A stretch of 64,000 nt of DNA from Geosiphon pyriformis uo1. Lineage: Eukaryota; Fungi; Glomeromycota. Positions 7,943 through 60,156 of this stretch are shown one piece after another. The position numbers and the translations under genes are program-made. Position 1 is the stretch's first letter; every line of letters begins with the position of its first letter. The notes beneath the pieces are model-generated. The model had not been told where the DNA came from and did no database searches. It saw only the letters and a list, made by a program, of their open reading frames with translations. The stretch spans positions 4,765 through 68,764 of the forward strand of contig JAAOMT010000083.1 of NCBI GenBank assembly GCA_016748015.1. Direction: 5' to 3'.

Positions 7943-8980
7943 ATGGGTGTTTGCTTTTCATGTTCAAAATACCCCACTTTGAAAAAATCCAAATCTCGCT
8001 CACCTTTCAAAAAATCTTCATCAAAGTCCCTACAGATTTCAAACCCTTCATTTTCTCAGTTCGCAACAACAAAATATAATTTACCAACATTTGACTCTTT
8101 AACATCACCACAAAGCTTAGCACCTTTTCTCTACCGTTATATTTGGCAATCAAACTTCTCCTCACCAATTTTACATAATCTCAAAACACCCGGATTTCGT
8201 GTTCTAGATATTGGCTATGGTTCATCAACTTTTCTTCAAGCTCTCGCAAATGAATATCCATTAACAATTTTTACAGGGATTGACTTGAAAGAAGAATTTG
8301 TCTTAGATCAAGGAAGAGGAAATTTGAGGTTTCATAAAGTAGATTTAAAAGAAGGGTTCAAACTTGATTATGAAGATGAATCTTTTGATTTTGTCTGTTT
8401 GAGATTTTTGGGTTGGAAAATTAGTGAAAACGAGATCAAAAGAGTATTAGACGAGGGATTTCGTTGTTTGAAGTCGGGTGGATGGGTTGAAGTGATGGAT
8501 CTCGAAGGGCAAGGAATGAATCAAGGATTTTCAACCGGTCGATTGACCAATGCCTGTAAGAATTATTTTATTTTATTTGATTATGTTAGCTAAAAATTTT
8601 CTAGTAATTCTAACCCCATTTCAATTCCTAAAAATCTAGTTCGTCAACACCTCATAGCAACTTCAAAAACACCACATCTGCCTTCTTTACTTACGCCTCT
8701 CCTCAATTCACACAATTTACTTGATATTCAAATTAATGAACAATGTCATCCTCTCGGTGACTGGGATGATCTATTAGGCGAAGTCGCAATTTCACATCTT
8801 ATACAACAATTTTTTGATTTAAAAGAAGAAATGAAAACCATTTTAGGAGTTGACGATGAAGGATTTGAAGATTTAATTCGAAATGTCAGATCTGAATGTA
8901 GTGTGTTTCAAACATACTGGATTAGTGTACGGGGATTTGGGGTTAAACCATACGTCGAACGAAAGGGGGTCAGTGGCTGA
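7943..8980 (+). CDS. Class I SAM-dependent methyltransferase (fungal LaeA-like/Methyltransf_25 type), ~317 aa, 2 exons
   Basis: Exon 1 is 7943-8555, the intron is GTAAGA..TAG (8556-8639), and exon 2 is 8640-8980 ending in TGA; the spliced frame is open. Motifs: YIWQSNFSSP, motif I RVLDIGYGS, FTGID, DESFDFV, RCLKSGGWVEVMD, HPLGDW. Confidence 0.9.
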
Positions 8981-19456: not shown

Positions 19457-21121
19457 ATGTCTTCAACCTCTTCAATTGAAAACGCAACTTCCCCCCTCGA
19501 CTGGCTTGAAGGAACATTGCTTGTCATCAAAGAAAATTTGCCTATTTTTCCAGCTAATGAATATTCAAAAGTTGCTGACTTAGTTAAAAATCATCTTGTA
19601 CGCAATCAGAAAACACCTGAAAATTTTTTCGATTACTTGAATGAGAAAAATTCAAAGCGTCCGATAGATAATATTTTACTCGGCTTTTCTTTAGAACATG
19701 GGATTGGAACTATTCCTAATTTACCAAAAGCATTCCTAGAATATCAAAAAGCAGCGAAGGCAAAAATTTCTTTTGGACAATTCTTCTTAGGTTATTGTTA
19801 TGATAATGGAATTGGTACTTCACAAGATCAAGGAAAAGCATTTGAACTCTATTCAAAAGCAGCAGAGGTGGGACATTTAGAGGCACAATATAATCTTGCA
19901 CTTTGTTATGATAATGGAGAAGGAATGATAAAAAATTCAGAAAAAGCATTTGAACTTTATTCAAAAGCAACAGAGGCAGGACATTTAAAGGCACAATATA
20001 ATCTTGCAGTTTGTTATGATAATGGAGAAGGAACGATAAAAAATTCAGAAAAAGCATTTGAACTTTATTCAAAAGCAGCAGAGGCAGGACATTTAGAGGC
20101 ACAATATAATCTTGCACTTTGTTATAATAATGGAGAAGGAACGATAAGAAATTCAGAAAAAGCATTTGAACTCTTTTCAAAAGTAGCAGAGGCGGGAGAT
20201 CTTGATTCCCAATACAACCTTGCACTTTTTTATGCTAATGGAAAAGGAACGACAAAAAATTCAGAAAAAGCATTTGAACTCTATTCAAAAGTAGCAGAGG
20301 CGGGAGATCTTGATTCCCAATACAACCTTGCACTTTTTTATGCTAATGGAAAAGGAACGACAAAAAATTCAGAAAAAGCATTTGAACTCTATTCAAAAGT
20401 AGCAGAGGCGGGAGATCTTGATTCCCAATACAACCTTGCACTTTTTTATGCTAATGGAAAAGGAACGACAAAAAATTCAGAAAAAGCATTTGAACTCTAT
20501 TCAAAAGTAGCAGAGGCGGGAGATCTTGATTCCCAATACAACCTTGCACTTTTTTATGCTAATGGAAAAGGAACGACAAAAAATTCAGAAAAAGCATTTA
20601 AACTCTATTCAAAATCAGCAGAGGTAGGACATTTAGGTGCACAATACAACCTTGCACTTTGTTATGCTAATGGAAAAGGAACAACAAAAAATTCAGAAAA
20701 AGCATTTGAACTTTATTCAAAAGCAGCAGAGGCAGGACATTTAAAGGCACAATACAATCTTGCAGTTTGTTATGATAATGGAGAAGGAACGATAAGAAAT
20801 TCAGAAAAAGCATTTGAACTCTATTCAAAAGCAGCAGAGGCAGGACATACAGAAGCACAATTCGAACTTATAACTTGTTATGAATATGGATGTGGAACAA
20901 CGAAAAATTTGGTAAAAGTATTTAAACTCCATTTAAAAGCAGCCGAGGCAGGAGATAAAGATGCACAATACAAGCTTGGATGTTGTTATCTGAATGGAAG
21001 TGGAACAACAAAAGATCAGACAAAAGCATTGAAATATTATTTAAAAGCAGCAATGGAAGGAAATTTTTTGGCAATTTACAAATTCAACCTTTGTTTTGAT
21101 AGTAGATTGGGAGAATTCTGA
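19457..21121 (+). CDS. Sel1-like repeat protein (13 x 36-aa repeats), kinase-less paralog of 29320-34581
   Basis: Single open exon from ATG 19457 with repeats AQYNLAxxYxNGxGTxKNSEKAFELYSKAAEAG. The N-terminal ~140 aa align with the downstream paralog. Confidence 0.9.
   Translation: MSSTSSIENATSPLDWLEGTLLVIKENLPIFPANEYSKVADLVKNHLVRNQKTPENFFDYLNEKNSKRPIDNILLGFSLEHGIGTIPNLPKAFLEYQKAAKAKISFGQFFLGYCYDNGIGTSQDQGKAFELYSKAAEVGHLEAQYNLALCYDNGEGMIKNSEKAFELYSKATEAGHLKAQYNLAVCYDNGEGTIKNSEKAFELYSKAAEAGHLEAQYNLALCYNNGEGTIRNSEKAFELFSKVAEAGDLDSQYNLALFYANGKGTTKNSEKAFELYSKVAEAGDLDSQYNLALFYANGKGTTKNSEKAFELYSKVAEAGDLDSQYNLALFYANGKGTTKNSEKAFELYSKVAEAGDLDSQYNLALFYANGKGTTKNSEKAFKLYSKSAEVGHLGAQYNLALCYANGKGTTKNSEKAFELYSKAAEAGHLKAQYNLAVCYDNGEGTIRNSEKAFELYSKAAEAGHTEAQFELITCYEYGCGTTKNLVKVFKLHLKAAEAGDKDAQYKLGCCYLNGSGTTKDQTKALKYYLKAAMEGNFLAIYKFNLCFDSRLGEF
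20176..20599 (+). repeat. Perfect 108-bp tandem repeat (~4 identical Sel1 units)
   Basis: Units start at 20176, 20284, 20392 and 20500 and are nucleotide-identical up to ~20599. Confidence 0.95.
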
Positions 21122-21500
21122 GTCCACCAAATAAACTTGGAACGTGTTATCAAAATGGATAGGGAACACAAAAAACCTAAAAAAAAGTATTTGAACTCTA
21201 CTGAAAAGCATAGGCAAATAAATTAAGTCATTAAAATGATTTTCCTGATTTATATTAGGATGACCCGGAGCCTTTCAGTTTACAAATTCAAAGCAGAATT
21301 TATAGATTTTGAAACTTTCTTTAACCAGCTTTCAAATAAAAACTTGGGTATAATCATTAATGGATCTCATATATGTCCATTTCGTGATACGGATGAAAGG
21401 GATGATATCTTTCAAGTCGGGATTATCGGAATGTCTAAATCCATTTTGGTGTAAATCTTGCTAACGTTCACGATTTTCAAAGATTTAGCAAACATAGAAT
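21122..21500 (+). pseudogene. Decayed remnant of the last Sel1 repeat and Cys-rich linker of the Sel1-kinase family
   Basis: A frameshifted Sel1 unit (cttggaacgtgttatcaaaatgga...), 'EFIDFETFFNQLSN..NLGIII..CPF' and ccattttggtgtaaatcttg...tcacgattttcaaag align by eye to 33085-33330 of the paralog. No kinase follows. Confidence 0.85.
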
Positions 21501-29319: not shown

Positions 29320-32300
29320 ATGTCTTCGACTTCATCAATTGAAAATGTAACTTCACACACCGATTGGCTTGAAGCAGCATTCATAGTCATCAAAGAAAGT
29401 TTGGCCATTTTTCCAGCTAGTGAATATTCAAAAGTTGCTGACTTGGTGAAAAAATATCTTGTGCGCAATCAGAAAACACCTGAAGACTTTTTCAATTGCT
29501 TGAATAATAAAAGTTCAAAGCGCTCAATAGACTATATTTTGTTGGGGTTTTCTTTAGAACATGGGGTTGGAACTATTCCTAATTTAACAAAAGCATTTTT
29601 AGAATTCCAGAAAGCAGCGAATCAAGAAGATTCTTTTGGACAATTCTTCTTAGGATGTTGTTATAATCATGGAATTGGTACTTCACAAGATCGAGGAAAA
29701 GCATTTGAACTCTTTTCAAGAGCAGCAGAGGTGGGACATACAAGTGCACAAAATAGTCTTGGAGTTTGTTATGAAAATGGATGGGGAACGACAAAAAATG
29801 AGAAAAAAGCATTTGAACTCTATTCAAAAGCTGCAGAGGTGGGTAATACAATTGCACAATATAATCTTGCGCTTTCTCATAAAAATGGAAAAGGAACGAC
29901 GAAAAGTGAGAAAAAAGCGTTTGAACTCTATTCAAAAGCTGCAGAAGCGGGTAATATAAATGCACACTTAAGTCTTGTACTTTGTTATGAAAATGGATGG
30001 GGAACGAAGAAAAATGAGGAAAAAGCATTTGAACTCTGTTCAAAAGTTGCAGAGGCAGGAAATACAATTGCACAATTTATTCTCGGATTTTATTATGAAA
30101 ATGGATTAGGAACGACGAAAAATGAGGAAAAAGCATTTCAACTCTATTCAAAAGCTGCAGCAGCTGGTAATATGAATGCACAACAGAGTCTCGCCCTTTG
30201 TTATCAAAATGGAAAGGGAACGACAAAAAATGAGGAAAAAGCATTTGAACTCTTTTCAAGAGCAGCAGAGGCGGGAGATCCAATTGCACAATTTATTCTC
30301 GCACTTTATTATGAAAATGGATTAGGAACGACAAAGAATGAGGAAAAAGCATTTGAACTCTATTCAAAAGCTGCAGAGGGGGGTAATATAAATGCGTACT
30401 TAGGTCTCGCACTTTGTTATAAGAATGGAAGGGGAACGACAAAAAATGAGGAAAAAGCATTTGAACTCTATTCAAAAGCTGCAGAGGGGGGTAATATAAA
30501 TGCGTACTTAGGTCTCGCACTTTGTTATCAAAATGGATTAGGAACGACGAAAAATGAGGAAAAAGCATTCGAGCTCTATTCAAAAGCTGCAGAGGCGGGT
30601 AATACGAATGCACAATATAGTCTCGCATTTTATTATCAAAGTGGAATTGGAACGACGAAAAATGAGGAAAAAGCATTTGAAATCTATTCAAAAGCTGCAG
30701 AGGCGGGAGATACAATTGCACAATTTATTCTCGCCCTTTGTTATCAAAATGGATTAGGAACGACAAAAAATGAGGAAAAAGCATTTCAACTCTATTCAAA
30801 AGCTGCAGCAGCTGGTAATACGAATGCACAACATAGTCTCGCCCTTTGTTATCAAAATGGATTAGGAACGACGAAAAATGAGGTAAAAGCATTTGAGCTC
30901 TATTCAAAAGCTGCAGAGGCGGGTAATACGATTGCACAACATAGTCTCGCATTTTATTATCAACGTGGAATTGGAACGACGAAAAATGAGGAAAAAGCAT
31001 TTGAACTCTTTTCAAGAGCAGCAAAGGCGGGTGATATAAATGCACAACAGAGTCTCGCACTTTGTTATCAAAATGGATTAGGAACGACGAAAAATGAGGA
31101 AAAAGCATTCGAGCTCTATTCAAAAGCTGCAAAGACGGGTAATACGAATGCACAACATAGTCTTGCACTTTGTTATCAAACTGGAATGGGAACGACGAAA
31201 AATGAGGAAAAAGCATTTGAAATCTTTTCAAAAGCTGCAGAGGTGGGAGATACAATTGCACAATTTATTCTCGCACTTTATTATGAAAATGGATTAGGAA
31301 CGATGAAGAATGAGGAAAAAGCATTTGAACTCTATTCTAAAGCTGCAGAGGGGGGTAATACAATTGCATACCTAGGTCTTGGACTTTGTTATCAGAATGG
31401 ATTGGGAACGACAAAAAATGAGGAAAAAGCATTTGAACTTTTTTCAAGAGCAGCAAAGGCGGGTGATATAAATGCACAACAGAGTCTCGCACTTTGTTAT
31501 CAAAATGGATTAGGAACGACAAAAAATGAGGAAAAAGCATTCGAGCTCTATTCAAAAGCTGCAGAGGCGGGTAATATAAATTCATACTTAAGTCTCGCGC
31601 TTTGTTATAAAAAAGGAAGTGGAACGACGAAAAATGAGGAAAAAGCATTTGAATTCTATTCAAAAGCTATAGAGGGGGGAGATTCGTGTGCACAATATAG
31701 TCTCGCACTTTGTTATCAAAATGGATTAGGAACGACAAAAAATGAGGAAAAAGCATTTGAACTTTATTCAAAAGCTGCAGAGGCGGGACATAAAATCGCA
31801 CAATTAAAATTCGCACTTTGTTATCAGAATGGATTAGGAACGACCAAAAATGAGGAAAAAGCATTTGAAATCTTTTCAAAAGCTGCAGAGACGGGAGATA
31901 CAACTGCACAACAGTATCTCGCACTTTGTTATCAAAGTGGAAGGGGAACGACGAAAAATGAGGAAAAAGCATTTGAATTCTATTCAAAAGCTATAAAGGG
32001 GGGAGATTCGTGTGCACAATATAGTCTCGCACTTTGTTATCAAAATGGATTAGGAACGACAAAAAATGAGGAAAAAGCATTTGAACTTTATTCAAAAGCT
32101 GCAGAGGCGGGTAGTACAATTGCACAATACAGTCTCGCACGATGTTATCAAAATGGAAGGGGAACGACGAAAAATGAGGAAAAAGCATTTGAACTTTATT
32201 CACAATCTGCAGAGGCGGGAGATTCAGATGCACAATTTAATCTCGCACTTTGTTATCAAAATGGATGGGGAACGACGAAAAATGTGGAAAAAGCATTTCA

Positions 32301-34581
32301 ACTCTATTCAAAAGGTGCAGAGGCTGGAGATTCAGATGCACAATTTAGTATCGCACTTTGTTATGAAAATGGATGGGGCACAACGAAAAATGAGGAAAAA
32401 GCATTTGAACTCTATTCAAAAGCCGCAGAGGTGGGTAATATAAAAGCACAATACGGTCTCATACTTTGTTATCAAAATGGAAGGGGAACACCGAAAAATG
32501 AGGAAAAAGCATTTGAACTCTACTCAAAAGCTGCAAATGCTGGTAATGTAAATACACATTTAAGTCTCGCACTTTGTTATGAAAATGGAAGGGGAACGAC
32601 GAAAAATGAGGAAAAAGCATTTGAATTCTATTCAAAAGCTGCAAAAGCGGGAGATATAGTTGCACAACACCGTTTGGGACTTTATTTTCATAGTGGATCG
32701 GCGACAACAAAAGATCTTGAAGAAGTGAAAAATCCAAGTCCAGAAAACAATCTTGAAACGCGTCATCGAAATGAATGGGCAACTGCGAGGGATCTGGAAA
32801 AAGCATTTGAACTTTATTCAAAAACAGCCGAAGAAAGAAATACAAGTGCACTATATAATCTTGGCTGGTGCTATCAAAACGGGTGGGGAACAACAAAAAA
32901 TTTGGAAAAAGCATTTGAACTCTATTTAAAAGCAGCAGAGACAAATAACTTAAACCAACGAAGTGAATTTCCTGATTTGAAAGCCTTTTATCTCACTTTT
33001 AAGGATAAGGATCAAGATGAGCTGGAACGTTTCATTTTACAGTTCCAAACTCGAGGTTTAAAATGGGCCTTTAATTCCAAAGAAGAATGTATAGATTTTG
33101 AAGTCTTTTTTGATCAGCTTTCAAATCAATTCAAATGTCTTAGATGTGGCAACTTGGGTTTAATCATTAGTAGATCTATTGACGAAATTGATAATATCTT
33201 TGAAGCAGGCTTGCCCAAATGTCCATTTTGTGATGATATCTCTACCCACTTACCGAAATGTCCAGAATGCTATCACAGATTAAAAGATCCACTTTGGTGT
33301 CAGTCCTGTGAAATATCACGATTTTCAAAGAATTTTGAACCATCGATTAGTGGAAATATAAATATTGATATATATATAACATATACACAGATTATTTCTA
33401 AAAGCTCCAGGGAATGTTTGGAATGGATTTCTCCCGACGAGATCACATTTTTAGATGAGGTGGGAACGGGAGGATTTGGTATTGTCAAAGAAGGTAGATG
33501 GGAGGGAGGCAGAATTCTATTTTGGGACAAGAAAAATCAAAAATATGAACGAACTGGAGTTATGAAAGTTGCTTTAAAATGTCTCAAAGATAGCCAAAAT
33601 ATAAAATATATCAATTCATATGAGGTATCTCCTTTTAAGTAATTTATATGATTTTTGGTTATTATTATCCCTATTTCTTTTTTAACACTAAAATATTTGT
33701 ATTTAAATAGTTTATTGCGCATCTTAGAAGTGCCTCTTGCAAATACGTCCTTGAATGCTATGGAATAACCAAAGATGTTACAACCAATGAATTTATTATG
33801 GTTTTACCATTTGCGGAACACGGTGACCTCAGAGCTTTTCTCAAAGTGAACAAAGATACTTTTACTTGGGAAATGATTCTTCATATTCTTTTTCAAATTG
33901 CCAGTGGCCTAAGGTTTATACATGAATCAGAACTAGTGCATGGTGATTTACATCCTGGAAATATCCTTATATTGAAATCAAACCCCTTAAAAGTTGCCAT
34001 TGCGGATCTAGGACTCTGTCGTCCTGCTAATTACTCTCCAGAGCCTGGCGAAATATTTGGTGTTGTTCGATACCTAGCGCCTGAAATTTGTAACTTGTCA
34101 CCTCATACTAAGCATACCAAGTACAGCGATATTTATAGTTGTGCTATCATTTTCTGGGAAATTATTTCAGGAGTAAGACCGTGGAATCATGTTATAGATC
34201 TTATGTCTATTCAATTATCTATAATTCAGGGAAAGCGCCCTTTAATCGAAAAGCATATACCTCAATGTATCCGAGAAATGATTGAAAAAAATTGGGCTGA
34301 TGAACCGCATTGCCGTGATAGTGCGGAAGAACTTCAAAAAAGGGTTATTGCTGCTCACGACAACTGTAACTTAAATGAATCTGTTCTTAAAAACAAACTT
34401 AATTCCAAAAAGATACAAGATACGACATATTATAGAAGTCGTAAAATCTCAAGCCCTATAGTTTCTCAAAATGGTAAGCCTTTCATTTATTATATTTTAA
34501 TATATAATGAAATTTGGTTTAACCACATTTTTTTCAGAGTTAGATTTGGCATTTGATAGCAATAATGGGTTAAATTCATAA
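29320..34581 (+). CDS. Sel1-repeat (~32 units) + Cys-rich linker + C-terminal TKL-type protein kinase, ~1703 aa, 3 exons
   Basis: Exons are 29320-33624, 33711-34473 and 34538-34581 (TAA), with GT..AG introns and consistent phases. Kinase motifs: GTGGFG, VALK, alphaC Glu (YE|F), HGDLHPGN, ADLG, YLAPE, SDIYS. Four CxxC pairs lie in the linker. Confidence 0.93.
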
Positions 34582-44871: not shown

Positions 44872-46361
44872 TTATCTTTTTATAATTTGAAAAACTTCAT
44901 ACTCCTCGAAAAGGAAATTCACCCGTCCCTTTTCTGATCCAGGCATTATAGCATGCTCATATTCTGTTGTCTTTTGACAATAGCAGCCTGGACTATTTTT
45001 AAAATCATCGCTACACACACGAATATCGGCATTAAATTGGGGTCCATGATTTGGCTCACCATAAGGTCCATATATGCCAACAAATTTGCTAAGCTTAGAA
45101 TTTCCAGCTTTGCCATCTCCAAGGGAAAAAATAAAAATTCCTCTTCCATTTATATTTTCTCCCCGAGTGCCAAGACTGTGGGTTATAGCCGCCAATTATC
45201 TGACCAGTTCCTTTCACTTTTATTACGCTTACTGTTGCTCCTTTATCATCACATAATCGATGAAAATCGGCTGGAGTGAATCCGTCTCGACTGCCTCGAA
45301 GTAACAATTGGAAATCATTTCTAAGTTGATCTTCGAAAGGAGTATTTTCGTCTTTGCCTTCAATCCAATGATCAAGTTGTTTTATATTATGCAATCGAAG
45401 AAGCTTTGAATTGAGATTTGATCGTAATGGCTGAGCATCTACAGACTTTTGATGACTACCCGGTACGAGATAATGATGTAAAAGATCTTCATATAAAGTT
45501 CCAGGTAAGATTCTCGCAAATGGTTTTACTTTGTGATAGAAGTCAACTGAAGATATGTTAAAGAACCGGATTAAAGGTAAAAGTCTTTCAATAGATTCCT
45601 TAAAGGCGTTAAAGTTTTCATCTGTCCAGTAAAGAACGTTCTTCGTCTGAATATTGTTCTCTAATTTAGCAACTCCCCATTCTATAATTTTTTGCCATAT
45701 TTCAGATTCTTCTATATTTAGATCATCTCGGGTTAAAACTGAGGAAAGAACATTTTCACTAAGCGAGGTGAAATCTTGCGAGTTGAAGACTATAGCTGGA
45801 TTGTTAGCAGCTATTTCGGCGCAGAAATTTTGTAAATTTTTGAAAGAATCATGCTTAAATGAAGTTCTCTGCAATGTGGCGAAATTTTCTTCTAGCTCTT
45901 TTGCATGGTGTTCAATCAAATAGTCTTCAAGGTGATCAATAAATTTTACTAGAATAAGCTCATCAGCGATAACAAGCAATTCTAAAATGGTAGGTACTCC
46001 ATATTTATCAAGAGAAATCTCGCCATTATAAATATATCTGTATAGGAAAAAAAACATATAAATCATATTGGCCAAAATACTTTAAAGCAAATGAAAGCCC
46101 TTACCTGAGAATTATTTCAAAAATATTAGGAGAGATATTAGGTTTAGCGAAGATAATGGTATTATTTTCCCTTTTGATCCAATTGCCAGAGAGTGCTACA
46201 GCAAAATAGGGTGATCTTGCTGCTAAAATTTGCGAATGAGCTTGAAAAGTTCTAATATTAGGCGCTTCGCCAACTATAATTCTAACATCAGAGAACTTCT
46301 GACTGTCAAATAGATTCCCGAAATCATTGGATAAAGCGTGAAAGTGTTGTTGGGGTGACAT
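44872..46361 (-). pseudogene. BTB/POZ-BACK-TLDc protein gene with a single frameshift in the TLDc domain (pseudogene or sequence error)
   Basis: Exon 1 is 46361-46105 (SDVRIIVG..FQAHSQILAARSPYF), the intron is 46104-46038, and exon 2 starts at 46037 (YIYNG; BACK EESEIW..WG, LIRF; TLDc LLRGSRDGF..FHRLCD..IIGGYNP). The TLDc end (FIFSL..HGPQF..EEYEVFQI) is in another frame after the C4 run at 45161-45164. Confidence 0.85.
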
Positions 46362-46699: not shown

Positions 46700-49600
46700 C
46701 AAATTGGAATAACACATTAACCAATAGCAAAAAAAACAAGTATTATATAATAAAAATAATCAAAAAGAAATTTCAATTAAAAAGTGAATTAAATATGTAT
46801 AAATTAAATATGCAAATTTGTTTTATAAATATCTCAGCTATTATTTTTCAAAGAGTTTAAAAAAATAAAAAAATGGTCTGTACTGTTAACAAAAGATAAC
46901 ATAACTAATATAATTCTATGTCTCAATTAGTGCTTGTAAAATTTGGTAACAGATATTGTTTGTGTTTTTCAGTAATTATTTATTTAATAAGATTTCTTAA
47001 AAGCGTAAGATAATTATATATTAAAAAAAGAAAAAAGAAAAAAAATTATGATCTTTTAGATAAAAAATGTACGAAGAATTTTAATTATTGTGTTAAAAGA
47101 ATTGATTTAAAAAATAAGTGTTTTAAGAATTATTTTTGTGACTAATATTTTTTTACAGCTTTGAAAAATCTTGTTTATATATCTTCAAAAAAAACAATTA
47201 ACCAAATTAATAAACAAATTAATGATTAGATTAATAATTAAGTCATTCATTAAGTTTATTATTATATTAATAAAAAATTATTATAAATAGATGATTTTAA
47301 AACTAAAAATAAAATATCTTAAAATTTACACAACTTTCTTTTAAAACAACCTAATAAACAGCAACTGATTTAATAATATAAAGCTCTTAAATAAAGATTT
47401 TTGTTTTTATAAATAATAACAAGCCAATATATTCATATATATTGATAAAACTTAAGATTTAAAAGAGTATTTAGTTTTATTTTAAGTATTTTGAAATAAT
47501 ATATTTTGTTTTATTTTTTTAAACACACTTAGCAAAATTTTTAATTTAAATGTAAAAAAATAATATGCTAGTAAAATTGTTTTACTTTTTTATTAAATAT
47601 TTGTAAATTATCTTTTTTTTATACAAAATTAATATTAATTTTGAGTATAAAGCTTTCTTAAAAAACAATTTTCTTTGCACAAAGTTATATAAAGCTGTTT
47701 AGTATTGTTTTTTGTTACTATTTATTTGTTTAAAAATTTTAGTTCAAATAAAATTTGTTTTTAATCTTGTTAAATTACATATTACAACATATATAGCAGT
47801 ATTAAAAAATAAAAATAATAGTTAATTTGATATTTTTAAAACTTTTGTTAACAAAAGTAGTATTTTTAATGATATATAAAAAATTTTAATTGTAAATTTT
47901 TGAATTTATTAATCTTTTAAGTAGTTATAATTAATAAATTTATAAAAAACTATAATAATATTTACATATTTTACTTATATTATATATATTTTAAACAATA
48001 ATATATAGAATTTTAAAGATAATTAATTAAATACAAATATTATAAGACTAAATTAATAATATTTTTTTATTTTTATCTAAATAAAAAACATTAATTTGCA
48101 TTTATTTACTATAAAATTAAATTTAAAATTTAAAAACAAAATATTTTAATATTTATAATTTAAATATTAATAAAAATTTAAAGAAGTTTTTTTATTTTAT
48201 TTTTTTTGTATTTTTGATTAAATTTTTCAGTTTTAAAATAACTTTTAACAAATAATTAACAGATATTATGAATTTTTTTTATTATATATTTTATAAGTAT
48301 GATTTAATTATTATCTAGTATATATAAACAAACCAAGAATTTATAGTTAGACAATTCATGTTTTTGTTATATGTAATTAGCTACTTAAATTAGTTAAAAC
48401 TATATTATACACTTATAACTATATTAATACTAATACTTAAACAAAAAAAATATATGTGTTAATTATATAAATTCAAATTAACAATTACAATTTTATTAAT
48501 ATTTACCAACTAAATTATATTATTTAACAAATATTTTATTAATTTATGTAAATTATATAAAATTGATAAATTATTAATAATTGAAATTCTTTTTTTTATT
48601 ATTAGTTAATATATAAATTAATATAATTAATCTTATTTTTGTAACTTTTTATTAAATGTTAAATTACTAAAATAATAAACAGCTTAATCAATTTAGTTTT
48701 TTTGAATACTAACAAAATTTTAGTATACTATTTACTAAAAATTATATATTTATACAAATAATATATTTTGTATTAACTAAAACACAAAAAACTATAAATT
48801 ATAATACTAAAAAAGATAAAACTAATATATTTATTAGAAAAACCCAAAATTTTAAAGCTTTTTTTAATATATTTAAGCGAATTTTAATATTTAATTTATA
48901 TATAAAATTATAATTCAAAAATTCAATCTTATTATAATAAAAACAAATCTTCTTAAGATATTATTTATTATATAAATATTTTGAATACCAATTATAAGTT
49001 ATTTATAAACAGTTTTTATAATATATATATAGATTAATAATATATTTATTGTTAATATCTAAATATATGTATAAAATTAAATATCATAAAGTATTATATT
49101 AATATTAAGTCTTATTTTTTTACTTAGTATTCTAGATTAAATTATAAATTTGATAAATAAAATAATAAATATTGTTTGAAACAACCATATTTTTTGATCA
49201 AAATTTTAAGAAAAAAGTAGCAGCATAAGTCAATTTATTAATAATTATATTAATAATTATACTTAAATGCTTTATAATTTTAAATTATACTATTAAAATG
49301 TTTTTATTATAAATAAAATTGTAAATTTGTTTTTTTAATCTAACAACTATTGTAAATATTAAGTTTATACAAATTAAACTTAAAAATACAAACATTAATA
49401 GTAATTTAACTGTCTAAATAAATAATAACTATATTTAAAAAATATATTTAAGAACTAAAACAATAATTTGCAGTTTAATAAATATTAATAACATTAAACT
49501 GAAAACCCAAATATTAATATTTAATTCCAAATTTTTAAAATATACAACAATTCTATTAATAATACTATAAAATCTTAATTTTTTTAATAAATTATCTGTA

Positions 49601-52600
49601 AAAACATTAATAATTAGCAGTTATATTTTTATCAAACTTTTACTAATCATTAATAAATTATTAGATTTTAATATATTCTGCCAAAAATATTATTTCCAAA
49701 AGAAAAATAGACTTATAAGCAAATTTTTTTTGAAAAAATTAAGTAATAACAATAAATTAATAAGATATTAGATTTTTAAGATTAAGTTTTTTTTATTAAT
49801 AAAAAGTTTTTTAGTTAAAATTTTGTTTTACTTATTAAGTAATTGCTTGTTAAAAATTACACTAAATTTTTTTAAAGAATAAATTACATTAAAATACAAC
49901 TTTATATTTAAAATATTAAAAATAAAAATATTATTTAAGTTTAAAAATATTAATAAAATAAACCAAATCAAAAAAACACTATAATTCAAAATAATTTTAA
50001 TCATATTAATTATATTAACCAAAAAATTGTTAATTAAATTAATATATAATCTAACTAAATAATACAAAAATTTAGCAGAGTTTAATTAGAAATCTATAAA
50101 TCTATAAATCTGTAATTAAAAAACCTATTAATAATATTAAATATATTTAAAAATAAGACTAAAAATACTATTTTGTTTTTAGCTTAAACCTGGTTAAATA
50201 ATTTAAAACTATATAACAAAAAATAATATAAAGCTTTATTTAAAAAGTTTTTAAAAAAATTTGCCTTATATCTTAAATTTTTATATATTATTGTATTTTA
50301 CTTCTGATACATATTTTTTAAAATAAAATTGAATTGTAATTTATAATTAATTATTAGTTAAAGCATAACAAAAACCAAATACAAGAACTATTTATCAAAA
50401 ATAGCTTTTTTAAAATTATATTTACAAAAAATTATATATATAAATAAATTTTAAACATATTAAGTTTAAAAAAATTATTTGTAAACAAAAAAATTAATAA
50501 ATAATAATACATTTTTTTGTTTTTTACTATAGCAATTAATAAATTGCTAATAAATAAATTAGCATTAGTAATATATTTGTTGATAAAAATAATCACAGTT
50601 TCTTTATTTAATAAAAATATTATTAATTTAAAAAATTACTAATCATATTAAAAATATATTGTATTATAGTATAATTATTGTTAATTCAGATAATATTATC
50701 AACAAAAACATTAGCTTTTAAATATAATATTAATTTAAAATAAGTATTAATATAATTTGTTTTTAATATGCATTTAAATTTAATATAATAACCAAAAAAC
50801 TATTTATGTTTCTTTATTTTGTACAAAAAAAATTAAAAAAAATGTGTTATAACAAAAAAAAAAGCTTTACTTTAATTTTAATTATTATAAAATTTTATAG
50901 TTATTATTTAATCTAAAATCAATTATTACATGATTTAAATAGTTATTATAAATGCTTTTAAAAAATTTAACAAATTTAAAACATATTTTAATTCTTAATA
51001 AACTGTTTTTTAAATAAAACTATTTATAAAATTATATGTTTTATATATATTCTATAAAATTAATTACAATTTACAATTTTTTTTAATACATTTTTTATAA
51101 CTAAACTATGGCAAAAATTAGTAATAAAATTAATATACTTTTTAAAACTAAAAAGTTGTTATTACAAAAAATATTTAATTAACTACATATATTAAAAATA
51201 TAATTTAACAAAAACTTTGACAAAATTTTATAAGCAGTTTTAATCAGAATTATAAAATAAATATTTGTTAAAATTTCTTTCTAATTATAAAATATAAGAT
51301 TATTAAAACTTATACATATTTTTATTAAACAGACACTAATTTTAAAGCCAAACAAAAATTCAAAAAAACCAAAAATAAACTTAAAACACTTATATTATAA
51401 TACTATTAAAATTTATTTAAAATATCTAAAAATTTAATTGTCTTATTAACAAAAAGCAACTTTATTATTAAAAAAAATTTATTTAAAATTTATTTTTTTC
51501 TAAAAAACTATTATTATTTTGCAAAAAAATATTCTAAAATAGTAATATTTATTAAAATTAAAATGTTATTACTAATTAAATAGATTTTAGTAATGTTTAA
51601 TAACTTAACAAAATATTTTTTTATTATAATGTGTCTATACATGTAAAATTACTTATAAAATAAAAAAATTTATCAATTATAATATTATATTTCATATAAA
51701 ATAGCTTAATAATATATAAATAGTTCTAAAAAACATAAGTTTACAAATCATATTATTATACTTAATATAAAAACTATAAATAAACACAATATTTATAGCA
51801 TATACAAAGCTTTTAATTAGAAAAAAGCTTTAAAAAACTTGATTATTAATAAAAAAATATTGTTTAAAATTATTTAAAAAAATATGTGTATTTTTGTGTT
51901 AAATTAGAATCTCAAGATATATACTATTATTATTAACAGAAATTTAAGTTATTAATTAGCATGAAATTATTTTTATAATTTTTATTATTAATAACTTAAT
52001 TTGTATAAAACACAAATATAACTAAATTATAATAATTAAAAACTATAATATACTAAATTATATAACAACCAGAATTTGTCAAAATATTTAATAATTTATT
52101 AAAATAACTTATAATTTAAAAAAATAATTTGTAATTTGATAAAATGTATTTTTAGTTTACCAAAATATTAAGAAAAAAAAATGCTAAATTATAGAATAGT
52201 ATTACAATAAATTATATAAAAATAGAGCTTTTTTCTTCAAAATAATGTATTATTTCTTAAATATTTTTTTAAAATTGATTTATCTTACAAATTAATTCAA
52301 TAAAAATTTATCTTAAAAACCCAAAAACTTTTAATTATTGTTATTTCAAAATTAATTATTTTGTATTAATATTTGAAATTAATTAACTATTAATTTTAAT
52401 AAATATTAATAACTTTCAAATCTAAATTCAAACTGACTTCTTTGAATTATTTCTTTATTTTTTTTTAGTTATTTTTTTATTTTTATTTTTTTCTATATTT
52501 TTAAATAACTTATAATTGAGATTTTCTGTAAAAGAGTTGACTTTTTTAGCAAAGTAATTACATATTATTTAGAAAGTTTATAAATAAAATTTTTTGTAAA

Positions 52601-55600
52601 AGAGTTAACTTTTATTACAAAGTGATTATACAAAATAATTGATACAGAATTGGCTATTTTATTATAAATTTAACAACAAACACAATTCAAAATATAGAAA
52701 AATAATTTAAAAAATAAATAAGCTTATTGATGTTTATTAACTTCTATTAAACAACAAAATTAATAACAGCAAAAAAAAATAAAATTTTTTTTGATAATAC
52801 TATAATAAAATAGATAATAAAACAAAAATTTTTCAAAGTTTAAAAAAACACCAAAACACTAATATATTAAGTAAATAATTAGTAATTTTAAAAGTTGTAA
52901 ATAATTAAATTTTTTTAATAAACAATAATATTCATATAAGTAATGTAATTTTCAATGTTTTTTTTATTATATTTATATTATTTCAAAGTTTAAAAAAAAT
53001 ATAATCGAATTTGATAAATAATTTTATTGTTAAAAAAATTACAATAAAAAAAAACAAAAATTTGAATAATTATTGCTTTATATAATAATATTAAATAGAT
53101 AAACTTTCTAATAAATAACAAATTTAATAACTTAAAAGTTTTTTAAGTTTTTAAATCTAACTTAAATTCTTTTTGGTTAATATATTCTATTTAATTATAT
53201 TTTAAATATTAAAAAAGCCAATTTGATTATATTATATAAACAAAAACTAAAAAAACACAGTATTAAAATTATTTTGGTATTTGACAAATAAAAAATTATT
53301 TTAAAACAACATATTTTGGCTTATTATTAATTTTATTAACTAATAAAGTTCAAATTTAAAAGGTAATTAATATAAACTTAAATAAAAATAAATAATTAAA
53401 ATTATTCCTAAAATTAAAATTATATCAAATATATAGGCTAAATTATTAGTAATTATTTTTTAATAATATATTAGTATATATTGCAGTAAAATAAAAATTT
53501 ATATTTATATTACTATTTTGAACAAATATTGGCTATAATTACAATACCTAAAATTTATTTTCTTTTTATGTTTTACTTATGAATATAATCTTGCCATAAG
53601 TAATATATTTAAAAAACCTAATAAATTTAAAACTGTATTAAAACAAATAATAACAATAGTTAATTATTTTAATAATACAATTTATTTATATTTTATCAAA
53701 AAGTTTCGAAAAGTTCAAAAATAAATATATTCAAATTATATTACTTTAATTTATTCAGATAATATTTATTAGAATTTTTATTATTATTGTCTTAAAAATT
53801 TTGTCAAGCTTTAAAAATAAGTATATAATTATAGATTTATTAATTTAATTAACTTTTAATTTAACATTAAATTTTTCAAAAATCTAGCTATTATTTATAA
53901 ATTATTTTTAAATCAACTTTTAATTCATCTTAATAAATTTTATTTGTTATAAAATATAATATTGATTTTGCTTAATAACAATTTTTGATAATTAATAACA
54001 TATTTGTATTTTCTGTTTTTTCTTTATTATAGAACTTTTAACAAATCACAATTAGATACTATTTGTTTTTATAAAATATTACAAGCTTTTAATTGCATTT
54101 TAAAAATATGAAAAGAATATTTAAATTAAGATTTAACACAATATATAATTTAATAATTAGGGTAAAAATAGAAAAAATAAAAGCAACTTTTATTATTGTT
54201 AATTTTTTTTTAAATTCAAATATTCATAATATATAATTTAAAACTAATATTGAAATTTAAACTTTATATATTTTGCTTAATTTATTACTTATTATTATAA
54301 AACCTGATTTAAATACCAGTTAATTTATATTTTGTTTGAGTTAGAAAAATATAGAAAACGAAATTATTTCTTTAATTTTATAATATATAAACAATTTAGA
54401 AAAAATATATTAAGATTTTGAAAATTTGCTTTCTTTTAACTAGAAAATTAAATTTTTTGACAATATATTTATTTAAAATTTATGTCAATATAGTATTTAT
54501 AAAGTAACTATAAAGTTCAAAAAGATTTTTTTATATTAATTAATAAAACTATTTTCAAGTAAAATATTTTTATTTATCTTTATTAAAATAAACAAATTTA
54601 TTGTTTTTTAAAATTTAAAATAAAAAAGTATTAGCTATAAGCTAAATTTATTCTTTAATTAACTTTTTTTAATGAAAAAACGAATTTTATAAACAATATC
54701 TTGTTTAACCAATTCAATATACTATTTATCAATAAAATTGTTAATAAGTCTATTAATAAATTTTTTATTAAAAAATTTATTAATAAAATAAATAAATGTA
54801 AAATAGATAATAAACAAAATAAATTGCAAAATATTAAAATATTAAATATAATAATATCTAATAATTAAAAAATCAATTACATAACTGGAAACAAATATTA
54901 ATAGATAAAAAAAATTGCCAGATTAGAAAATAAAAAAACAGAAATAATAATAATGGCAATATAAAAAGTAATTTATTAAATAATTACAAATATTTAGCAA
55001 TAAATAACAAAACAAAATAAAAACTAATTAATATATTTGGTTTATTGTTTTAAAAACTAAATTTTATAAATAATAATAACTATTTTTTATTATTAATATA
55101 TACATTTTTATTGATTATATTATTTATCATATTTATATTTTAATTAATTAATATTATGTTAGTTTTAATAAAATAATTGTTCTAATAAGAATTTCTATTA
55201 AAATTATTAAAACTCTAAAAAAATTCGAATGTTTAATAAACTTTTTAATATTTAGTATCAATCCTGTTTTAAAATCTTACATATTATGTTATTTTTATTA
55301 TAAGCAAAATTTTTATGTACTTATTAATTGCTAAGTTAATTCTATCTGATTTAACTTTGTAAAATTCATGAAATTTCTTGATATAATAAATTTTTGGGTT
55401 ATATAAAAAGTTAAATCAACAATATTAAAACTTAAACCAACTTAAATACTATTTTAAATAATTCTAATTATTTCAGAATTTAATTTTAACTATTTATGTA
55501 TAAATTTAACAAAATTCATATCTAAAACTAAAAATAAATACTTAAATAATTTGGAAATTAGAAATTTTAATTTCAAGAAATAAGATAAACAAAAATTTAT

Positions 55601-57800
55601 TATATATAAAGTCTTATTAAACCAAGTGTTAAAAAACACTTATTTTGTATATTATATTTAAATTACTTATTAATCTTAGTTTTTTAAAGTTATTTTTTAT
55701 AATATTTAATTTTTACAAAAAATATTCTTAAATTTAACCTATTTAATATTTTTAATATTCTTAAAATTATATTTTTAATGATTTTTATTGATTTATTTTC
55801 ATAAATTAAAAAGTATAATATTTAAAAATCTTTTTCTAACTCTAATAAAATACATATAATCTTATAATCTATTAAAAAAAACTTCTGTGTATTTAATATT
55901 CTATAAATTATTACAATATTATACAAAAAAAACAAAAACAAAATAAAATTTATAATTTTTTTAATCTTATAAAAATTCATCTATGTAAAAATTTTAATAA
56001 ATAAACTATCTAAAAGTAAATTAATCAGACTAAAATTCAAATATTTTTTGAAACTAGTATTGTATTTTGTATTATTTTTAAAATTATTTTCTAAAATAAT
56101 AAAAATATTCTTATTAAAAGTTTTAATTATAAAATTATTAATAATTAAAATTTGACTTAACTATATACTTAAAAATATATTTTTATATAATTTTAGTATT
56201 GTGATTAACTATTTGTTTTTGAATACTGACTGAATTATTAAAAGCTGATTAAAAACTTTTGAGATTTTAAAAACATGTTTAATTAAATAGTTATTTATGA
56301 TTATTATAATACTAATATCTAAGAAGTTTAAATTTAAACCAGATGTAAATACTTTTATATTATTAAATTTATTAGTAATTTAAAGTTTAATATTAGAATA
56401 AAGCTTAATTTTTATTATAATTAAAACATTATTTTTTATTTTTTTATGTTATTTAATAATATTATTTTGTTTAATAAAAACATTTATGTTTTTAATATTA
56501 CATATAGTTATTTTTTAAGTTAAGCTACTTATTGAGAATAAACAAGATTATATTACTACTTAAACAAAAGCAATCAAGTTTTTTTAATATAAATTTTATT
56601 AATCTTTTAAATTATTATATTAGCTTTCAGACTATCAATTTTGAAAGTTAAAACTTTAAAATTATTTAAAAAAAGATTCAAAGAATTATGTATTATATTA
56701 AATAAAATTAGATAACTTAATAATAATTTGTCAATAATTATATTTAATTTTATGTTAAAATTTTGTATAAGTACTTTATTGGTCTTAATAATAAAAATAA
56801 AAAACATTTAATTTGTAAATAATTTTTGAAACATAGTTTATAAAAAACTTCAAAGAATATTCTAAAATCTTAATACATAAATTTAAAGTTATTTTTACAA
56901 AAAAAAGTGATCCAAAAATATTGGAAAATGTAATTATTACATAATAATATAAAATAATATAAAATAATTCAAAATAATACAAAATAATATATAATAATGC
57001 AAAATAGTACAGAAAAACTAGTAATAATATAAAATAATTAATTATAATATAAAAAAATAAAACAATAGTAAAAATAGTAAGCAATAATTAATAACAACAA
57101 ATAATTAAAAGCAATTTTATAGAACTAAAAAATATGTATAAAATAAATAGTTTTAATAGTTAAAAAAAAAACTGATCAGACAAAAATTAATTTTTCTTTA
57201 ATATTTTATCTTTATTCTAATAAATTTTTATCTTATTCTTATTTATATTTTTTAACTAATCTAATAAAATAATATTATTTAATTTACAATTATATGATTC
57301 CAAAATTTTAATTGCCAAAATTTAATTAATTGTTTTTTTTATTTTTATTTTAAATCAGATACTATTAACATAAATACTTTTAGAATTTTAATAATTTAGA
57401 CTAATTTTTCTTGATTATAACAATTGATAAAATACTAATTTCTTTTATATATTTTTTTATTTTATTTTTTATTTTTTTATTTTTTATTTTTTTTGTAAAA
57501 TAACAATATTGAAAATTAATTGTTTTTGAATTAAACTTCATAATAGCCTGATAAAAGAGAAAAGTTTTTTCTAAATTTAAATATTAACTTTATTTATTAG
57601 TTTATCAAAAAAACAAAAAACCAATGCCAAATTTTAACAACTATATTTGACTAGCTTAGAAAAAAAAACATCTCTGTATCTTATAACAAAAGAACTTAAT
57701 AAATAAAACTTTAAACAAAAAATTTTTTAAAGATTAATAATTTATTTTATTACTAAAATTAATTTATTTGAAATTATTTTGTTTTTAATATCAAATTATA
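46700..57800. repeat. Extremely AT-rich block, probably nested hypermutated retroelement relics
   Basis: G and C are very scarce, CpG is nearly absent, and there are no credible ORFs. It is flanked by recognisable decayed LINE pieces and holds a ~70-bp tandem duplication at ~52521-52635. Family assignment is not possible by eye. Confidence 0.55.
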
Positions 57801-57869
57801 AACACTAAATATTATAATCATATTTTTTAAAATTTATTTATAATATTATTAAACATATTAAGCAAACTT

Positions 57870-59300
57870 TTTGCTAAAAAAACCTAAAATAATACAAATA
57901 AAAGACTTTTTATCATATTGCTTATTATAAAAGCTTAATTTATACTACCAAAAAAGACTAAACAAGACACAAAAATCTGTTTTTTTACATAAATATACAT
58001 AATATAATTTTTATTTGACATAAAAAATTTAGTTTTATTTTAATTAAGTAATTTGGTATTTAGTATATTAATATTAAAAATATGATCATATTTTTTATAA
58101 TTAATATACACTAAAATTAATAAACAAGTCCAATTTAAACTTATATTCTTAAACATCAGAATTACACAAATAATAATATTTTTAACAAAAACAAAATTAA
58201 AACATATAATAATATAATATATATATATATAAGAAACAAAATTATAAGAAATAAAACAATTTTTTTTATTATATAATAACAAATAATCTGAAAGATTATG
58301 AATAGTAATATTTATTAACAGTATATATAAAAAAGTATAATAGCAGATTTTTAAGTTTTATATTTGTTTTTTATTGTTGGTTTTGGCTATATATACAAAG
58401 TTTTTATTTAATAAAATTAATTATTTAAAAATAATTAAATTTATAATTTTAATACTCTTAAACTTAATCAATATTTTTTATCAGAAACTAATAATTGTAG
58501 TTTGATTATTTTAATCTTATTAAATTTAAATAATATTAATTTTAATGTTAATTTAAACAGATTAATTAGACTTTTCTTAATAATAATTTTTTAATCTAAT
58601 TTAATGCTAATTTTTATAAATTCATATTAATCAAAATTTTTTTACTAATAGCCAGCTTTTTAATTACTTTTAAATTAAATTTAAAAATAAACATCAATTA
58701 AATAATGTTTTAGAAAAGTAAGTGCTTTTTCAAAACTATTAATTTTGCAAAAAAAGATTTTTAATATTTTTAAGTTTTTTATTTAATATTTTACTAGATA
58801 TTATAATAAAATTAATGTTTAAAGCAAAAAACTTAACTAAATTAAAGCATTTTTTTTCTTTGACTAATATATTAAACAACAAAATAAAACCAATAAAAAC
58901 AGATGGTAAGAGATCAAAAATTTTATTATTATATAAAAAATTATAAAACAGCTTTTTAGATGACTTTTTAAATAGTAAATTCATATATGTGTGTCTTTTA
59001 AAATTGTTTTATTTATGTATTTATTATTATTGAATATATTAAGATTGATAAAATTAGTTTTTTTATTATTGTGCTTTCAAGTTTTTAATGTTAAATATTT
59101 ATTAATATTATCTTTTTTACTCTTAACTTTATTGCTTTAAGAATAACATATAATTATATTATTATTTTTTAGCATTTTTATGGCCAAAAAATTTGTTAAT
59201 AAATTTATAATATTAAACTTAATAATAAGTCTTTTAAATTTTTTATTGAGTTTTTTTAACATATAAACATAAATATTTCGGTTTTTTTTGTGTTAAAACA
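57870..59300 (-). mobile_element. Heavily decayed LINE ORF1 copy related to the 63040-64000 element
   Basis: ORF 58739-58984 'EKKCFNLVKFFALNINF...KKLKNIKNLF' aligns with 'ERHSFEPVKSFTLDVEL...NKLISIKK' at ~63686-63786. ORF 58040-58282 'KKNCFISYNFVSY...ICF...FKNISLNW' resembles the ORF1 RRM-like segment. Confidence 0.65.
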
Positions 59301-60156
59301 GTTTTTACTTCAATTTTGTCAATATTTATAGCTCTAACCAAATTGTTAATTAACTTTATAGTTAAGTATAAAAATAAATGAAAGAAAAAAAATATAAATT
59401 TTTTACAAATTTTAATAGTTTTATTATAAACAGAAGATCAATAAAACAAAAAATTTTTTTATTAAAGTTTTATAATAAGTATAAAATTTTAAATTTTAAA
59501 TCTTTTTATTAATAAATAAAATAAAATACACTTTAATTATTAAATAATAGAAAATAATATTTTTATAACAATATTTTAAATAAATATTTTTTAATAATTT
59601 TATATACAATAAAACTTATTATAAGCTATTTTTGAATTTAATAAATTAGAAAATTTTAGTATTAATTTTAATTTACTTATTTATTTTTTTTAGAAAAAGC
59701 ATTTTTTATTCAAAAAACAGTTTGAAAAACCAAAAAAATTATATATAATTATATTAAAAATATTAAAATTAATTAATTTAAATTCTTAAATAAAATAAAG
59801 TTAAATTTTTAAAAAAATTTTTTTAAAAAAAAATTGCATAAATGATTTTAAAATTATCTAATTTATTTAATTTTTTTATTGGCATTTTTTGAATATTTTC
59901 AAATAATAATACTTTTATTTTCATTAAATTTGTATATTTATATTAAATTTATTAAATATTAAAAAAAGTTTATTTTCTAAAATTAATATTTTTGAGTTAT
60001 GATATAATAATAAGTATTTTATTAAAATATTAAATTTTTTGCAATAATAATTTGTTTAAAACTAAAAATAAAAATAAATAATTGTTTTTATTTTAGTTTT
60101 AATTTTTTAATATAATTTATTAGTATTAAAAAAAAATTCTTTGTTTTTTTAATTTT

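What the first reader, a model, noticed from the sequence alone, without database searches (positions are those of the whole stretch)
29530..32940. Sel1 array with invariant scaffold and hypervariable helix-A positions fused to a kinase: candidate diversifying non-self receptor
Seen: about 32 units of 108 bp. The segment GTTKNEEKAFxxxSKAA is almost invariant. Specific helix-A positions vary strongly: the two residues before Ala (TS/TI/IN/MN/PI/TN/SC/KI/TT/SD/IK), the two after Gln (NS/YN/FI/QS/YS/HS/LK/QY/FN/YG), and the residue in GxG (W/K/L/R/I/M/S). Established: in TPR/Sel1 superhelices helix A lines the concave ligand groove, and fungal NLRs such as Podospora HET-E/HET-D use highly internally conserved repeats with hypervariable binding residues. 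Inference: this is a cytosolic (no signal or TM segment seen), NOD-free sensor-kinase whose specificity is rewritten by repeat turnover, possibly for symbiont, endobacterium or allorecognition. It is the best candidate for an undescribed system in this window.
Basis: partly seen in the sequence, partly recalled or inferred. Interest (0 to 1): 0.85.

Follow-up and report, generated by a model that had tools for sequence, protein, structure and literature searches.

The report
Variable-groove Sel1 repeat sensor kinase
This gene of the cyanobacterium-hosting fungus Geosiphon pyriformis joins a protein kinase to 32 near-identical repeats that differ mostly on their binding face, and across its large gene family those positions change faster than silent DNA, as in fungal immune receptors; what it binds is unknown.

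Summary
Observation confirmed. An intact three-exon gene (29320-34581, 1703 aa) encodes an N-cap, 32 Sel1 units (27 homogenised, 83% nt identity), a cysteine-rich linker and a TKL kinase with intact catalytic motifs; no NOD, signal or TM segment. All close relatives are Geosiphon pyriformis proteins. The genome holds about 90 full-cap loci (150 scored matches), many broken, with about 3-31 repeats; this is the longest of 57 measured. Units are mosaic (PHI-type p=0.0005). Across 16 paralog arrays dN/dS is 2.3-3.2 at helix-A positions 2, 5, 9, 12 (the published TPR ligand face) and about 1.9 at loop position 15; the scaffold is 0.3-0.5. Neutral gene-conversion simulations never reached this (0/120; worst case 2/800). 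This gene alone is only borderline (about p=0.01-0.1). Best reading: a cytosolic sensor kinase whose specificity is rewritten by repeat turnover. It works like high-internal-conservation fungal NLRs but is not one. Ligand, expression and isolate polymorphism are untested; no NACHT or NB-ARC was found in the genome. The scan noted this family before on other DNA of the same genome.

The parts
29320..33624 (+). Exon 1 (1435 aa): N-cap, Sel1 array, linker, kinase N-lobe
29320..29523 (+). N-terminal cap, family-specific; profile search of 1.84 billion proteins gave full-length hits, and those checked by name were G. pyriformis
29524..29739 (+). Sel1 units 1-2, divergent capping repeats kept across paralogs (omega 0.43)
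29740..32655 (+). 27 homogenised 108-bp Sel1 units; variable at unit positions 1, 2, 5, 6, 12, 15 (family-wide also 9, 21, 36)
32656..32841 (+). Truncated unit 30 (no helix B) and degenerate unit 31; the same junction occurs in paralogs, so it is not decay
32842..32949 (+). Terminal Sel1 unit 32
32950..33444 (+). Linker with four CxxC motifs (33136, 33220, 33259, 33298), putative zinc-binding; fold model unreliable (pLDDT 36)
33445..33624 (+). Kinase N-lobe: GxGxxG at 33463, VALK at 33568
33625..33710 (+). Intron 1 (GT-AG, phase 0); junction agrees with annotated paralogs
33711..34473 (+). Exon 2: TKL kinase C-lobe (PF07714, E 1.7e-33); catalytic loop 33939, DLG 34005, APE 34077
34474..34537 (+). 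Intron 2 (GT-AG, phase 1)
34538..34581 (+). Exon 3, 14 codons and stop; resembles the tails of paralogs P0010 and P0011
19457..21121 (+). Paralog in the same window: same cap (77% aa), about 12 Sel1 units, stop before the linker, no kinase downstream

Best explanation
A cytosolic single-chain sensor kinase of a lineage-expanded G. pyriformis family. SHOWN: the Sel1 units form an SLR superhelix; unequal crossing-over and gene conversion keep changing their number and order and homogenise the scaffold; residues on the concave helix-A face (2, 5, 9, 12, with 1, 15 and 36 at its rim) are driven apart by diversifying selection; the family turns over by birth and death. INFERRED: the groove binds a fast-changing foreign or non-self molecule (from endobacteria, the Nostoc partner, a parasite, or another individual); binding or clustering switches on the C-terminal TKL kinase through the cysteine-rich linker, and the kinase starts a defence or acceptance response. 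The family would fill the role that high-internal-conservation NLRs have in Dikarya, in a genome where no NACHT or NB-ARC domain was detected.
For: Architecture and intact kinase motifs. Highest 19-residue hydropathy 1.33, no signal or TM segment. Model pLDDT 93.5 matches SLR crystal structures at TM 0.86. Per-site omega in 16 paralogs: 2.7, 2.3, 2.9, 3.2 at positions 2, 5, 9, 12; 1.9 at 15; scaffold class 0.44; holds with separate trees and rates for each half of the unit. These are the positions PMC1261162 names as TPR ligand-face sites. Omega lies on one helix face, permutation p=0.00035. Tree-free pN/pS is 2.03 pooled and above 1 in 17 of 17 arrays, against at most 1.36 in 120 neutral conversion simulations and 2 of 800 when all units are treated as one pool; tree-based null at most 1.32. 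Silent sites in the variable codons are not hypermutable (0.075 vs 0.16). Mosaic units and non-adjacent near-identical tracts of 84-223 bp. Repeat number about 3-31 across 57 loci; 12 of the 20 closest paralogs are broken or truncated. No NACHT or NB-ARC hit in the genome. The same regime is documented for fungal NLR repeats (PMC4986451, PMC13449251).
Against: No ligand, phenotype or expression data (no RNA run served). This gene alone is borderline: M8a vs M8 p=0.004-0.04, but conversion alone reached that statistic in 1 of 16 simulations, and the top-5-site statistic was reached in about 16% (3% when matched for silent diversity). Cap, linker and kinase show only weak purifying selection (omega 0.45-0.64). 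Broken and kinase-less copies carry the same signal. Only one DNA sample exists, so allele variation is unknown. The NOD search ignores introns. Groove assignment rests on TPR numbering and helix geometry, not on a co-structure.
Confidence: 0.58

Rival explanations
1. Fixed-ligand scaffold. Each repeat has a set job; conversion homogenises silent and scaffold sites while selection protects each unit's groove residues from being overwritten. This also gives pN/pS above 1 among units without any arms race.
For: Within-array comparisons cannot separate selection for new residues from selection against homogenisation (inference). 25 of 27 units have distinct groove codes.
Against: Repeat number runs from about 3 to 31 and the order of groove codes is not kept between paralogs. 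Near-identical tracts including groove codons recur at non-adjacent units. Many copies die.
Confidence: 0.14
2. Substrate-targeting kinase or decoy rather than receptor: the groove picks proteins (own or foreign) for the kinase to phosphorylate, or kinase-less copies sequester them.
For: Kinase-less Sel1-only copies with open frames exist (window 19457-21121, L038, L039, L042) and show the same signal. TPR domains recruit substrates in O-GlcNAc transferase (own knowledge; fold hit).
Against: A substrate adaptor for own proteins would not need diversifying selection. There is no signal peptide for delivery to a partner.
Confidence: 0.14
3. Relaxed selection in a redundant, repeat-prone expanded family: surface positions drift, and recombination inflates dN/dS.
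For: Weak constraint on kinase and cap; many pseudogenes; Sel1 and kinase genes of Rhizophagus are methylated and lie in gene-sparse regions (10.1101/2021.03.30.436303); this single gene does not clearly reject the null.
Against: Neutral simulations with none to 90% conversion give 0.94-1.0, never 2. Outer helix-B surface positions, equally free to drift, stay near invariant.
Confidence: 0.1
4. Assembly artefact or a targeted mutagenesis system (diversity-generating-retroelement-like).
For: Short-read contigs do not span the array, so unit order is not independently verified.
Against: All 27 units differ, and the frame is open over 4.3 kb. Read contigs match both flanks and parts of the array with no differences. 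Variation is not adenine-biased (A 0.09, C 0.14, T 0.11, G 0.11). No reverse transcriptase among the window ORFs scanned.
Confidence: 0.04

Closest known systems
High-internal-conservation fungal NLRs (Podospora HET-D, HET-E, HET-R; HIC TPR and ANK NLRs; PMC4986451, PMC13449251)
   Same: Near-identical superstructure repeats, a few positively selected residues on the binding face, repeat shuffling, birth-and-death turnover.
   Different: No NACHT or NB-ARC. Repeats are Sel1 type and N-terminal; the output is a C-terminal TKL kinase, not an N-terminal cell-death domain; Glomeromycota, not Dikarya; no allorecognition phenotype shown.
Expanded Sel1 and tyrosine-kinase-like families of arbuscular mycorrhizal fungi (PMC6123716; 10.1101/2021.03.30.436303; PMC8778642)
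   Same: Same two domains, same lineage, high copy number, function unknown, proposed role in perception of the environment.
   Different: Order here is Sel1 then kinase (kinase then Sel1 is the usual order in Rhizophagus; own knowledge). Cap plus linker relatives were found only in G. pyriformis; the best other fungal kinase hit is about 30% identical. No paper found reports homogenised units or groove selection in these families.
Helicobacter pylori slr/Hcp Sel1-like proteins (PMC1941758)
   Same: Sel1 repeats under positive selection at surface residues.
   Different: Bacterial, secreted, no kinase; selection is between strain alleles and not shown to arise from homogenised repeat turnover.
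Plant receptor-like kinases and kinase-fusion resistance proteins (own knowledge)
   Same: A variable sensor joined to a TKL-group kinase in one chain.
   Different: Those have an extracellular LRR or lectin sensor with a TM segment, or a single integrated domain; here the sensor is a cytosolic solenoid rewritten by repeat turnover.

Membership tests
Sel1-like repeat (PF08238) | 36-residue two-helix repeat above the curated cut-off, SLR superhelix | tested here: met
   965.8 bits, 29 stretches; model TM 0.86 to 6ok3, 0.84 to 4bwr
TKL kinase (PF07714) | Kinase domain with Gly loop, VAIK lysine, catalytic HxD, DxG, APE | tested here: met
   activity itself not tested
Fungal NLR (STAND) | Central NACHT or NB-ARC domain | tested here: not met
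   None in the protein; none in the genome by six-frame search, which can miss intron-split genes
Fungal NLR (STAND) | N-terminal effector domain, C-terminal repeats | tested here: not met
   Repeats are N-terminal, kinase C-terminal
HIC repeat receptors | High internal conservation (similarity 0.7 in PMC13449251; 85% over 100 aa in PMC4986451) | tested here: met
   Mean identity to consensus 0.81: above 0.7, below 0.85 over the whole array; T-REKS not run
HIC repeat receptors | Positive selection at binding-face residues, family level | tested here: met
HIC repeat receptors | Positive selection at binding-face residues, this gene alone | tested here: inconclusive
HIC repeat receptors | Repeat shuffling or conversion within arrays | tested here: met
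   PHI-type p=0.0005 here, p<0.01 in 7 of 11 arrays
HIC repeat receptors | Exchange of repeats between genes | tested here: inconclusive
   No identical unit shared between loci; 13 cross-locus pairs at 96% or more, which may reflect recent duplication
HIC repeat receptors | Repeat-number polymorphism between isolates | not testable with these tools
   One sample, one study
HIC repeat receptors | Non-self recognition or cell-death phenotype | not testable with these tools
   Needs experiments
AMF Sel1/kinase expanded families | Sel1 plus PF07714 in a multi-copy Glomeromycota family | tested here: met
   31 annotated G. pyriformis proteins at 50% identity or more carry both domains
Diversity-generating retroelement | Adenine-specific variation, template repeat and reverse transcriptase | tested here: not met
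   No adenine bias; no RT among window ORFs scanned

The most novel reading that the evidence does not exclude
G. pyriformis, and perhaps Glomeromycota generally, runs intracellular non-self surveillance without NLRs, using a repertoire of Sel1-array kinases whose specificity is recoded by repeat turnover, and this repertoire decides which cyanobacteria or endobacteria are accepted.
Probability: 0.3. Interest if true: 0.87.

Novelty: new variant of a known kind. Interest (0 to 1): 0.62.

Why it matters
Arbuscular-mycorrhiza-type fungi carry very large Sel1 and kinase families with no known function, and how these fungi tell partners from enemies is open. This family gives a testable answer: a named set of residues (2, 5, 9, 12, 15 of each unit), a measured selection signal and a single-chain output. 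It would also show that the evolutionary regime of fungal NLR sensors can be coupled to a kinase with no NOD, in the fungus known for taking up a cyanobacterium (own knowledge). As a by-product, 255 natural units on one scaffold describe which positions of a Sel1 binder tolerate change.

Tried and rejected
Mutation hot spot: rejected; four-fold sites in variable codons are less variable than elsewhere, and silent sites flanking codon 15 are invariant. Recombination artefact: rejected at family level, not for the single gene. First simulation round had too little diversity and was rerun; the second half timed out. DGR-like change: rejected. Higher-order periodicity of units: none (identity by lag flat). 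Linker fold: pLDDT 36, not used; Atlas hits under 0.9 to unnamed Mucoromycota clusters are leads only. Weak cap-profile hits to LRR and pseudomurein-binding repeat proteins cover 23-37 residues of repetitive proteins and were rejected as chance. Repeat pattern absent from metagenome contigs. No RNA run. The Geosiphon genome paper is not held; no paper held Glomeromycot + Sel1 + NLR + immun. The locus of P0024 could not be fetched. The spliced model was searched exon by exon; the joined form was never searched and was used only in scripts to check frame and hydropathy.
Full report
What is there. The window is AT-rich fungal DNA from a 128-Mb assembly of 792 contigs. An ATG at 29320 opens a 1435-codon exon that ends at 33624. 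A GT-AG intron (33625-33710) leads to exon 2 (33711-34473), and a second intron to a 14-codon last exon (34538-34581), 1703 aa in all. Both junctions agree with annotated paralogs. Pfam finds 29 Sel1 stretches in exon 1 and PF07714 in exon 2. The kinase has its Gly loop, VALK, catalytic loop, DLG and APE motifs. The highest 19-residue hydropathy is 1.33, so there is no signal or membrane segment (that script joined the exons with one extra base at the end of exon 2, corrected, which does not affect this result). The model was searched only exon by exon; the joined form was not searched.

The array. There are 32 units: two divergent capping units, 27 homogeneous units (29740-32655), a unit lacking helix B, a degenerate unit and a terminal unit. 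Core units are 83% identical in DNA and 81% identical to their protein consensus, yet all 27 differ. Nine positions are invariant. Nearest neighbours are mostly non-adjacent, near-identical tracts of 84-223 bp recur at lags of 1 to 9 units, and a PHI-type test shows mosaicism (p=0.0005; p<0.01 in 7 of 11 arrays). Short-read contigs of the one public sample match both flanks and parts of the array without differences but do not span it, so the unit order rests on the assembly.

Organism and family. Every close homolog of the cap, linker and kinase is a G. pyriformis hypothetical protein with Sel1 and PF07714 domains; other fungal kinases are about 30% identical. A cap profile run over 1.84 billion proteins gave 25 hits; the full-length ones checked are G. 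pyriformis, and the rest are short stretches in unrelated repeat proteins. In the genome the cap query gave 150 scored matches, about 90 of them near full length; the linker gave 141, and about 30 open kinase exons are 65% identical or more. Cap-to-linker spacing corresponds to about 3-31 units (median 11), and this gene is the longest of 57 pairs. Of the 20 closest loci fetched whole, four have an open frame through to a complete kinase (L031, L034, L047, L050), four have long open arrays with a partial or missing kinase (L037, L038, L039, L042), and the other twelve are broken or truncated. One paralog lies in this window at 19457-21121 and has lost its kinase. This is birth-and-death turnover. 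Units are closer within genes than between (84% vs 78%; 203 of 279 nearest neighbours in the same gene), which is concerted evolution.

Where the variation lies. An AlphaFold model of ten units (pLDDT 93.5) has helix A at positions 1-13 and helix B at 21-33 and matches bacterial SLR crystal structures at TM 0.82-0.86. Helix A aligns residue for residue with TPR numbering (A3, L7, G/A8, Y11). PMC1261162 names TPR positions 2, 5, 9, 12, 13, 33 and 34 as most variable and concave, and 2, 5, 6, 9, 12 and 13 as ligand contacts.

Selection. In this gene alone, my own codon models give omega 0.6 overall, with sites 5, 15 and 2 in a class near 2-3; M8a vs M8 p=0.004 (F1x4) or 0.04 (F3x4). Because conversion inflates such tests, I simulated arrays with omega capped at 1. 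One of 16 reached the observed statistic and four passed the nominal 5% level; the top-five-site statistic was reached in 16% of runs, about 3% when matched for silent diversity. With sites taken from the paralogs (2, 5, 9, 12, 15), 1-4% of runs reached the observed 1.81. The single gene is therefore borderline. The family is not. In 16 other arrays (228 units) per-site omega is 2.7, 2.3, 2.9 and 3.2 at positions 2, 5, 9 and 12, 1.8-1.9 at 1, 15, 21 and 36, 1.1 at 6 and 0.4 at 13; the TPR ligand-face set, fixed before the fit, gives 2.1-2.3 against 0.4 for the scaffold, and this holds with separate trees and rates for each half of the unit. Under the null the same estimator gave 0.72-1.32 in 30 runs. 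A tree-free ratio is 2.03 pooled and above 1 in all 17 arrays (1.3-4.4), against a maximum of 1.36 in 120 simulations; the post-hoc top-five value of 2.05 was also never reached. Treating all 255 units as one pool, the worst case for non-independence, 2 of 800 runs reached the observed value (30 of 800 for the post-hoc statistic). Silent sites inside the variable codons are not more variable than elsewhere, and the high values fall on one helix face (p=0.00035).

How it most likely works. Shown: a long SLR solenoid whose scaffold is homogenised and whose concave face is diversified and reshuffled, joined to a kinase with intact motifs, in a family that gains and loses members fast. Inferred: the solenoid is the sensor, a ligand that itself changes fast binds the groove, and binding or clustering activates the kinase through the CxxC linker. 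G. pyriformis takes up Nostoc and carries endobacteria (own knowledge), which are candidate sources, as are parasites and other individuals; nothing here picks among them. No NACHT or NB-ARC domain was found in the genome (intron-split genes can be missed), which fits the idea that this family does the job NLRs do in Dikarya. I put this reading at 0.58. The strongest rivals are a fixed-ligand scaffold protected from homogenisation and a substrate-targeting or decoy role (0.14 each); drift is 0.10.

Comparison with what is known. It works like the HIC NLRs of Podospora, where near-identical WD40, ANK or TPR repeats show repeat-number polymorphism and positive selection on the concave face (PMC4986451; PMC13449251). 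It is not an NLR: there is no NOD and the domain order differs. The second paper reports HIC in 5.6% of repeat proteins without an ATPase, so NOD-free HIC proteins exist, but its survey used ANK, TPR, WD40 and LRR annotations. Sel1 and kinase expansions are known in arbuscular mycorrhizal fungi with no function assigned, and Sel1 repeats under positive selection are known from H. pylori. I found no paper that describes homogenised, groove-selected Sel1 arrays fused to a kinase, but the library lacks most subscription papers, including the Geosiphon genome paper. One G. pyriformis protein (P0024) carries a kinase fragment before the same cap (hhalign 99%), which hints that the family arose by moving a cap-Sel1 module in front of another kinase; this rests on one possibly chimeric annotation.

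Verdict. Real, and a new variant of a known kind: an NLR-like evolutionary regime in a NOD-free Sel1-kinase. Earlier agents of this scan reached a similar reading on other members in this genome; I treat that as a repeat, not as support. Interest 0.62; 0.87 if it proves to be an NLR-free partner-recognition repertoire.

Noticed in passing
window 19457-21480 (+): Paralog with about 12 Sel1 units, including three identical adjacent units (about 20200-20520, a recent expansion), a stop at 21119 and decayed linker remnants at about 21240-21480; no kinase.
   Followed up: yes
window 33170-33270 (+): The linker has a local rearrangement relative to paralogs: a 12-residue insertion before the second CxxC and a shorter spacer after it.
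   Followed up: no
window 45095-46361 (-): BTB-BACK-TLDc gene, another expanded family of arbuscular-mycorrhiza-type fungi.
   Followed up: partly
window 7943-8593 (+): First exon of a SAM-dependent methyltransferase with an N-terminal MG-C motif that could be lipid-modified.
   Followed up: no
   Followed up: no
window 47000-60000: About 13 kb at 11-13% GC with many short AT-rich repeats and no convincing ORF.
   Followed up: no
   Followed up: no
P0024 (G9A89_000956): Kinase fragment, then the family cap, then decayed Sel1 units: the reverse domain order, a possible trace of the family's origin.
   Followed up: partly
G000:C653:838720 and G000:C630:109-672: Family-related open frames of 2065 and 1694 codons; may hold arrays longer than this one.
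   Followed up: no
unit position 21, family-wide: First turn of helix B varies (E/S/L/D, omega 1.9) in paralogs but is almost fixed as Glu in this gene; not explained by the TPR ligand-face model.
   Followed up: partly
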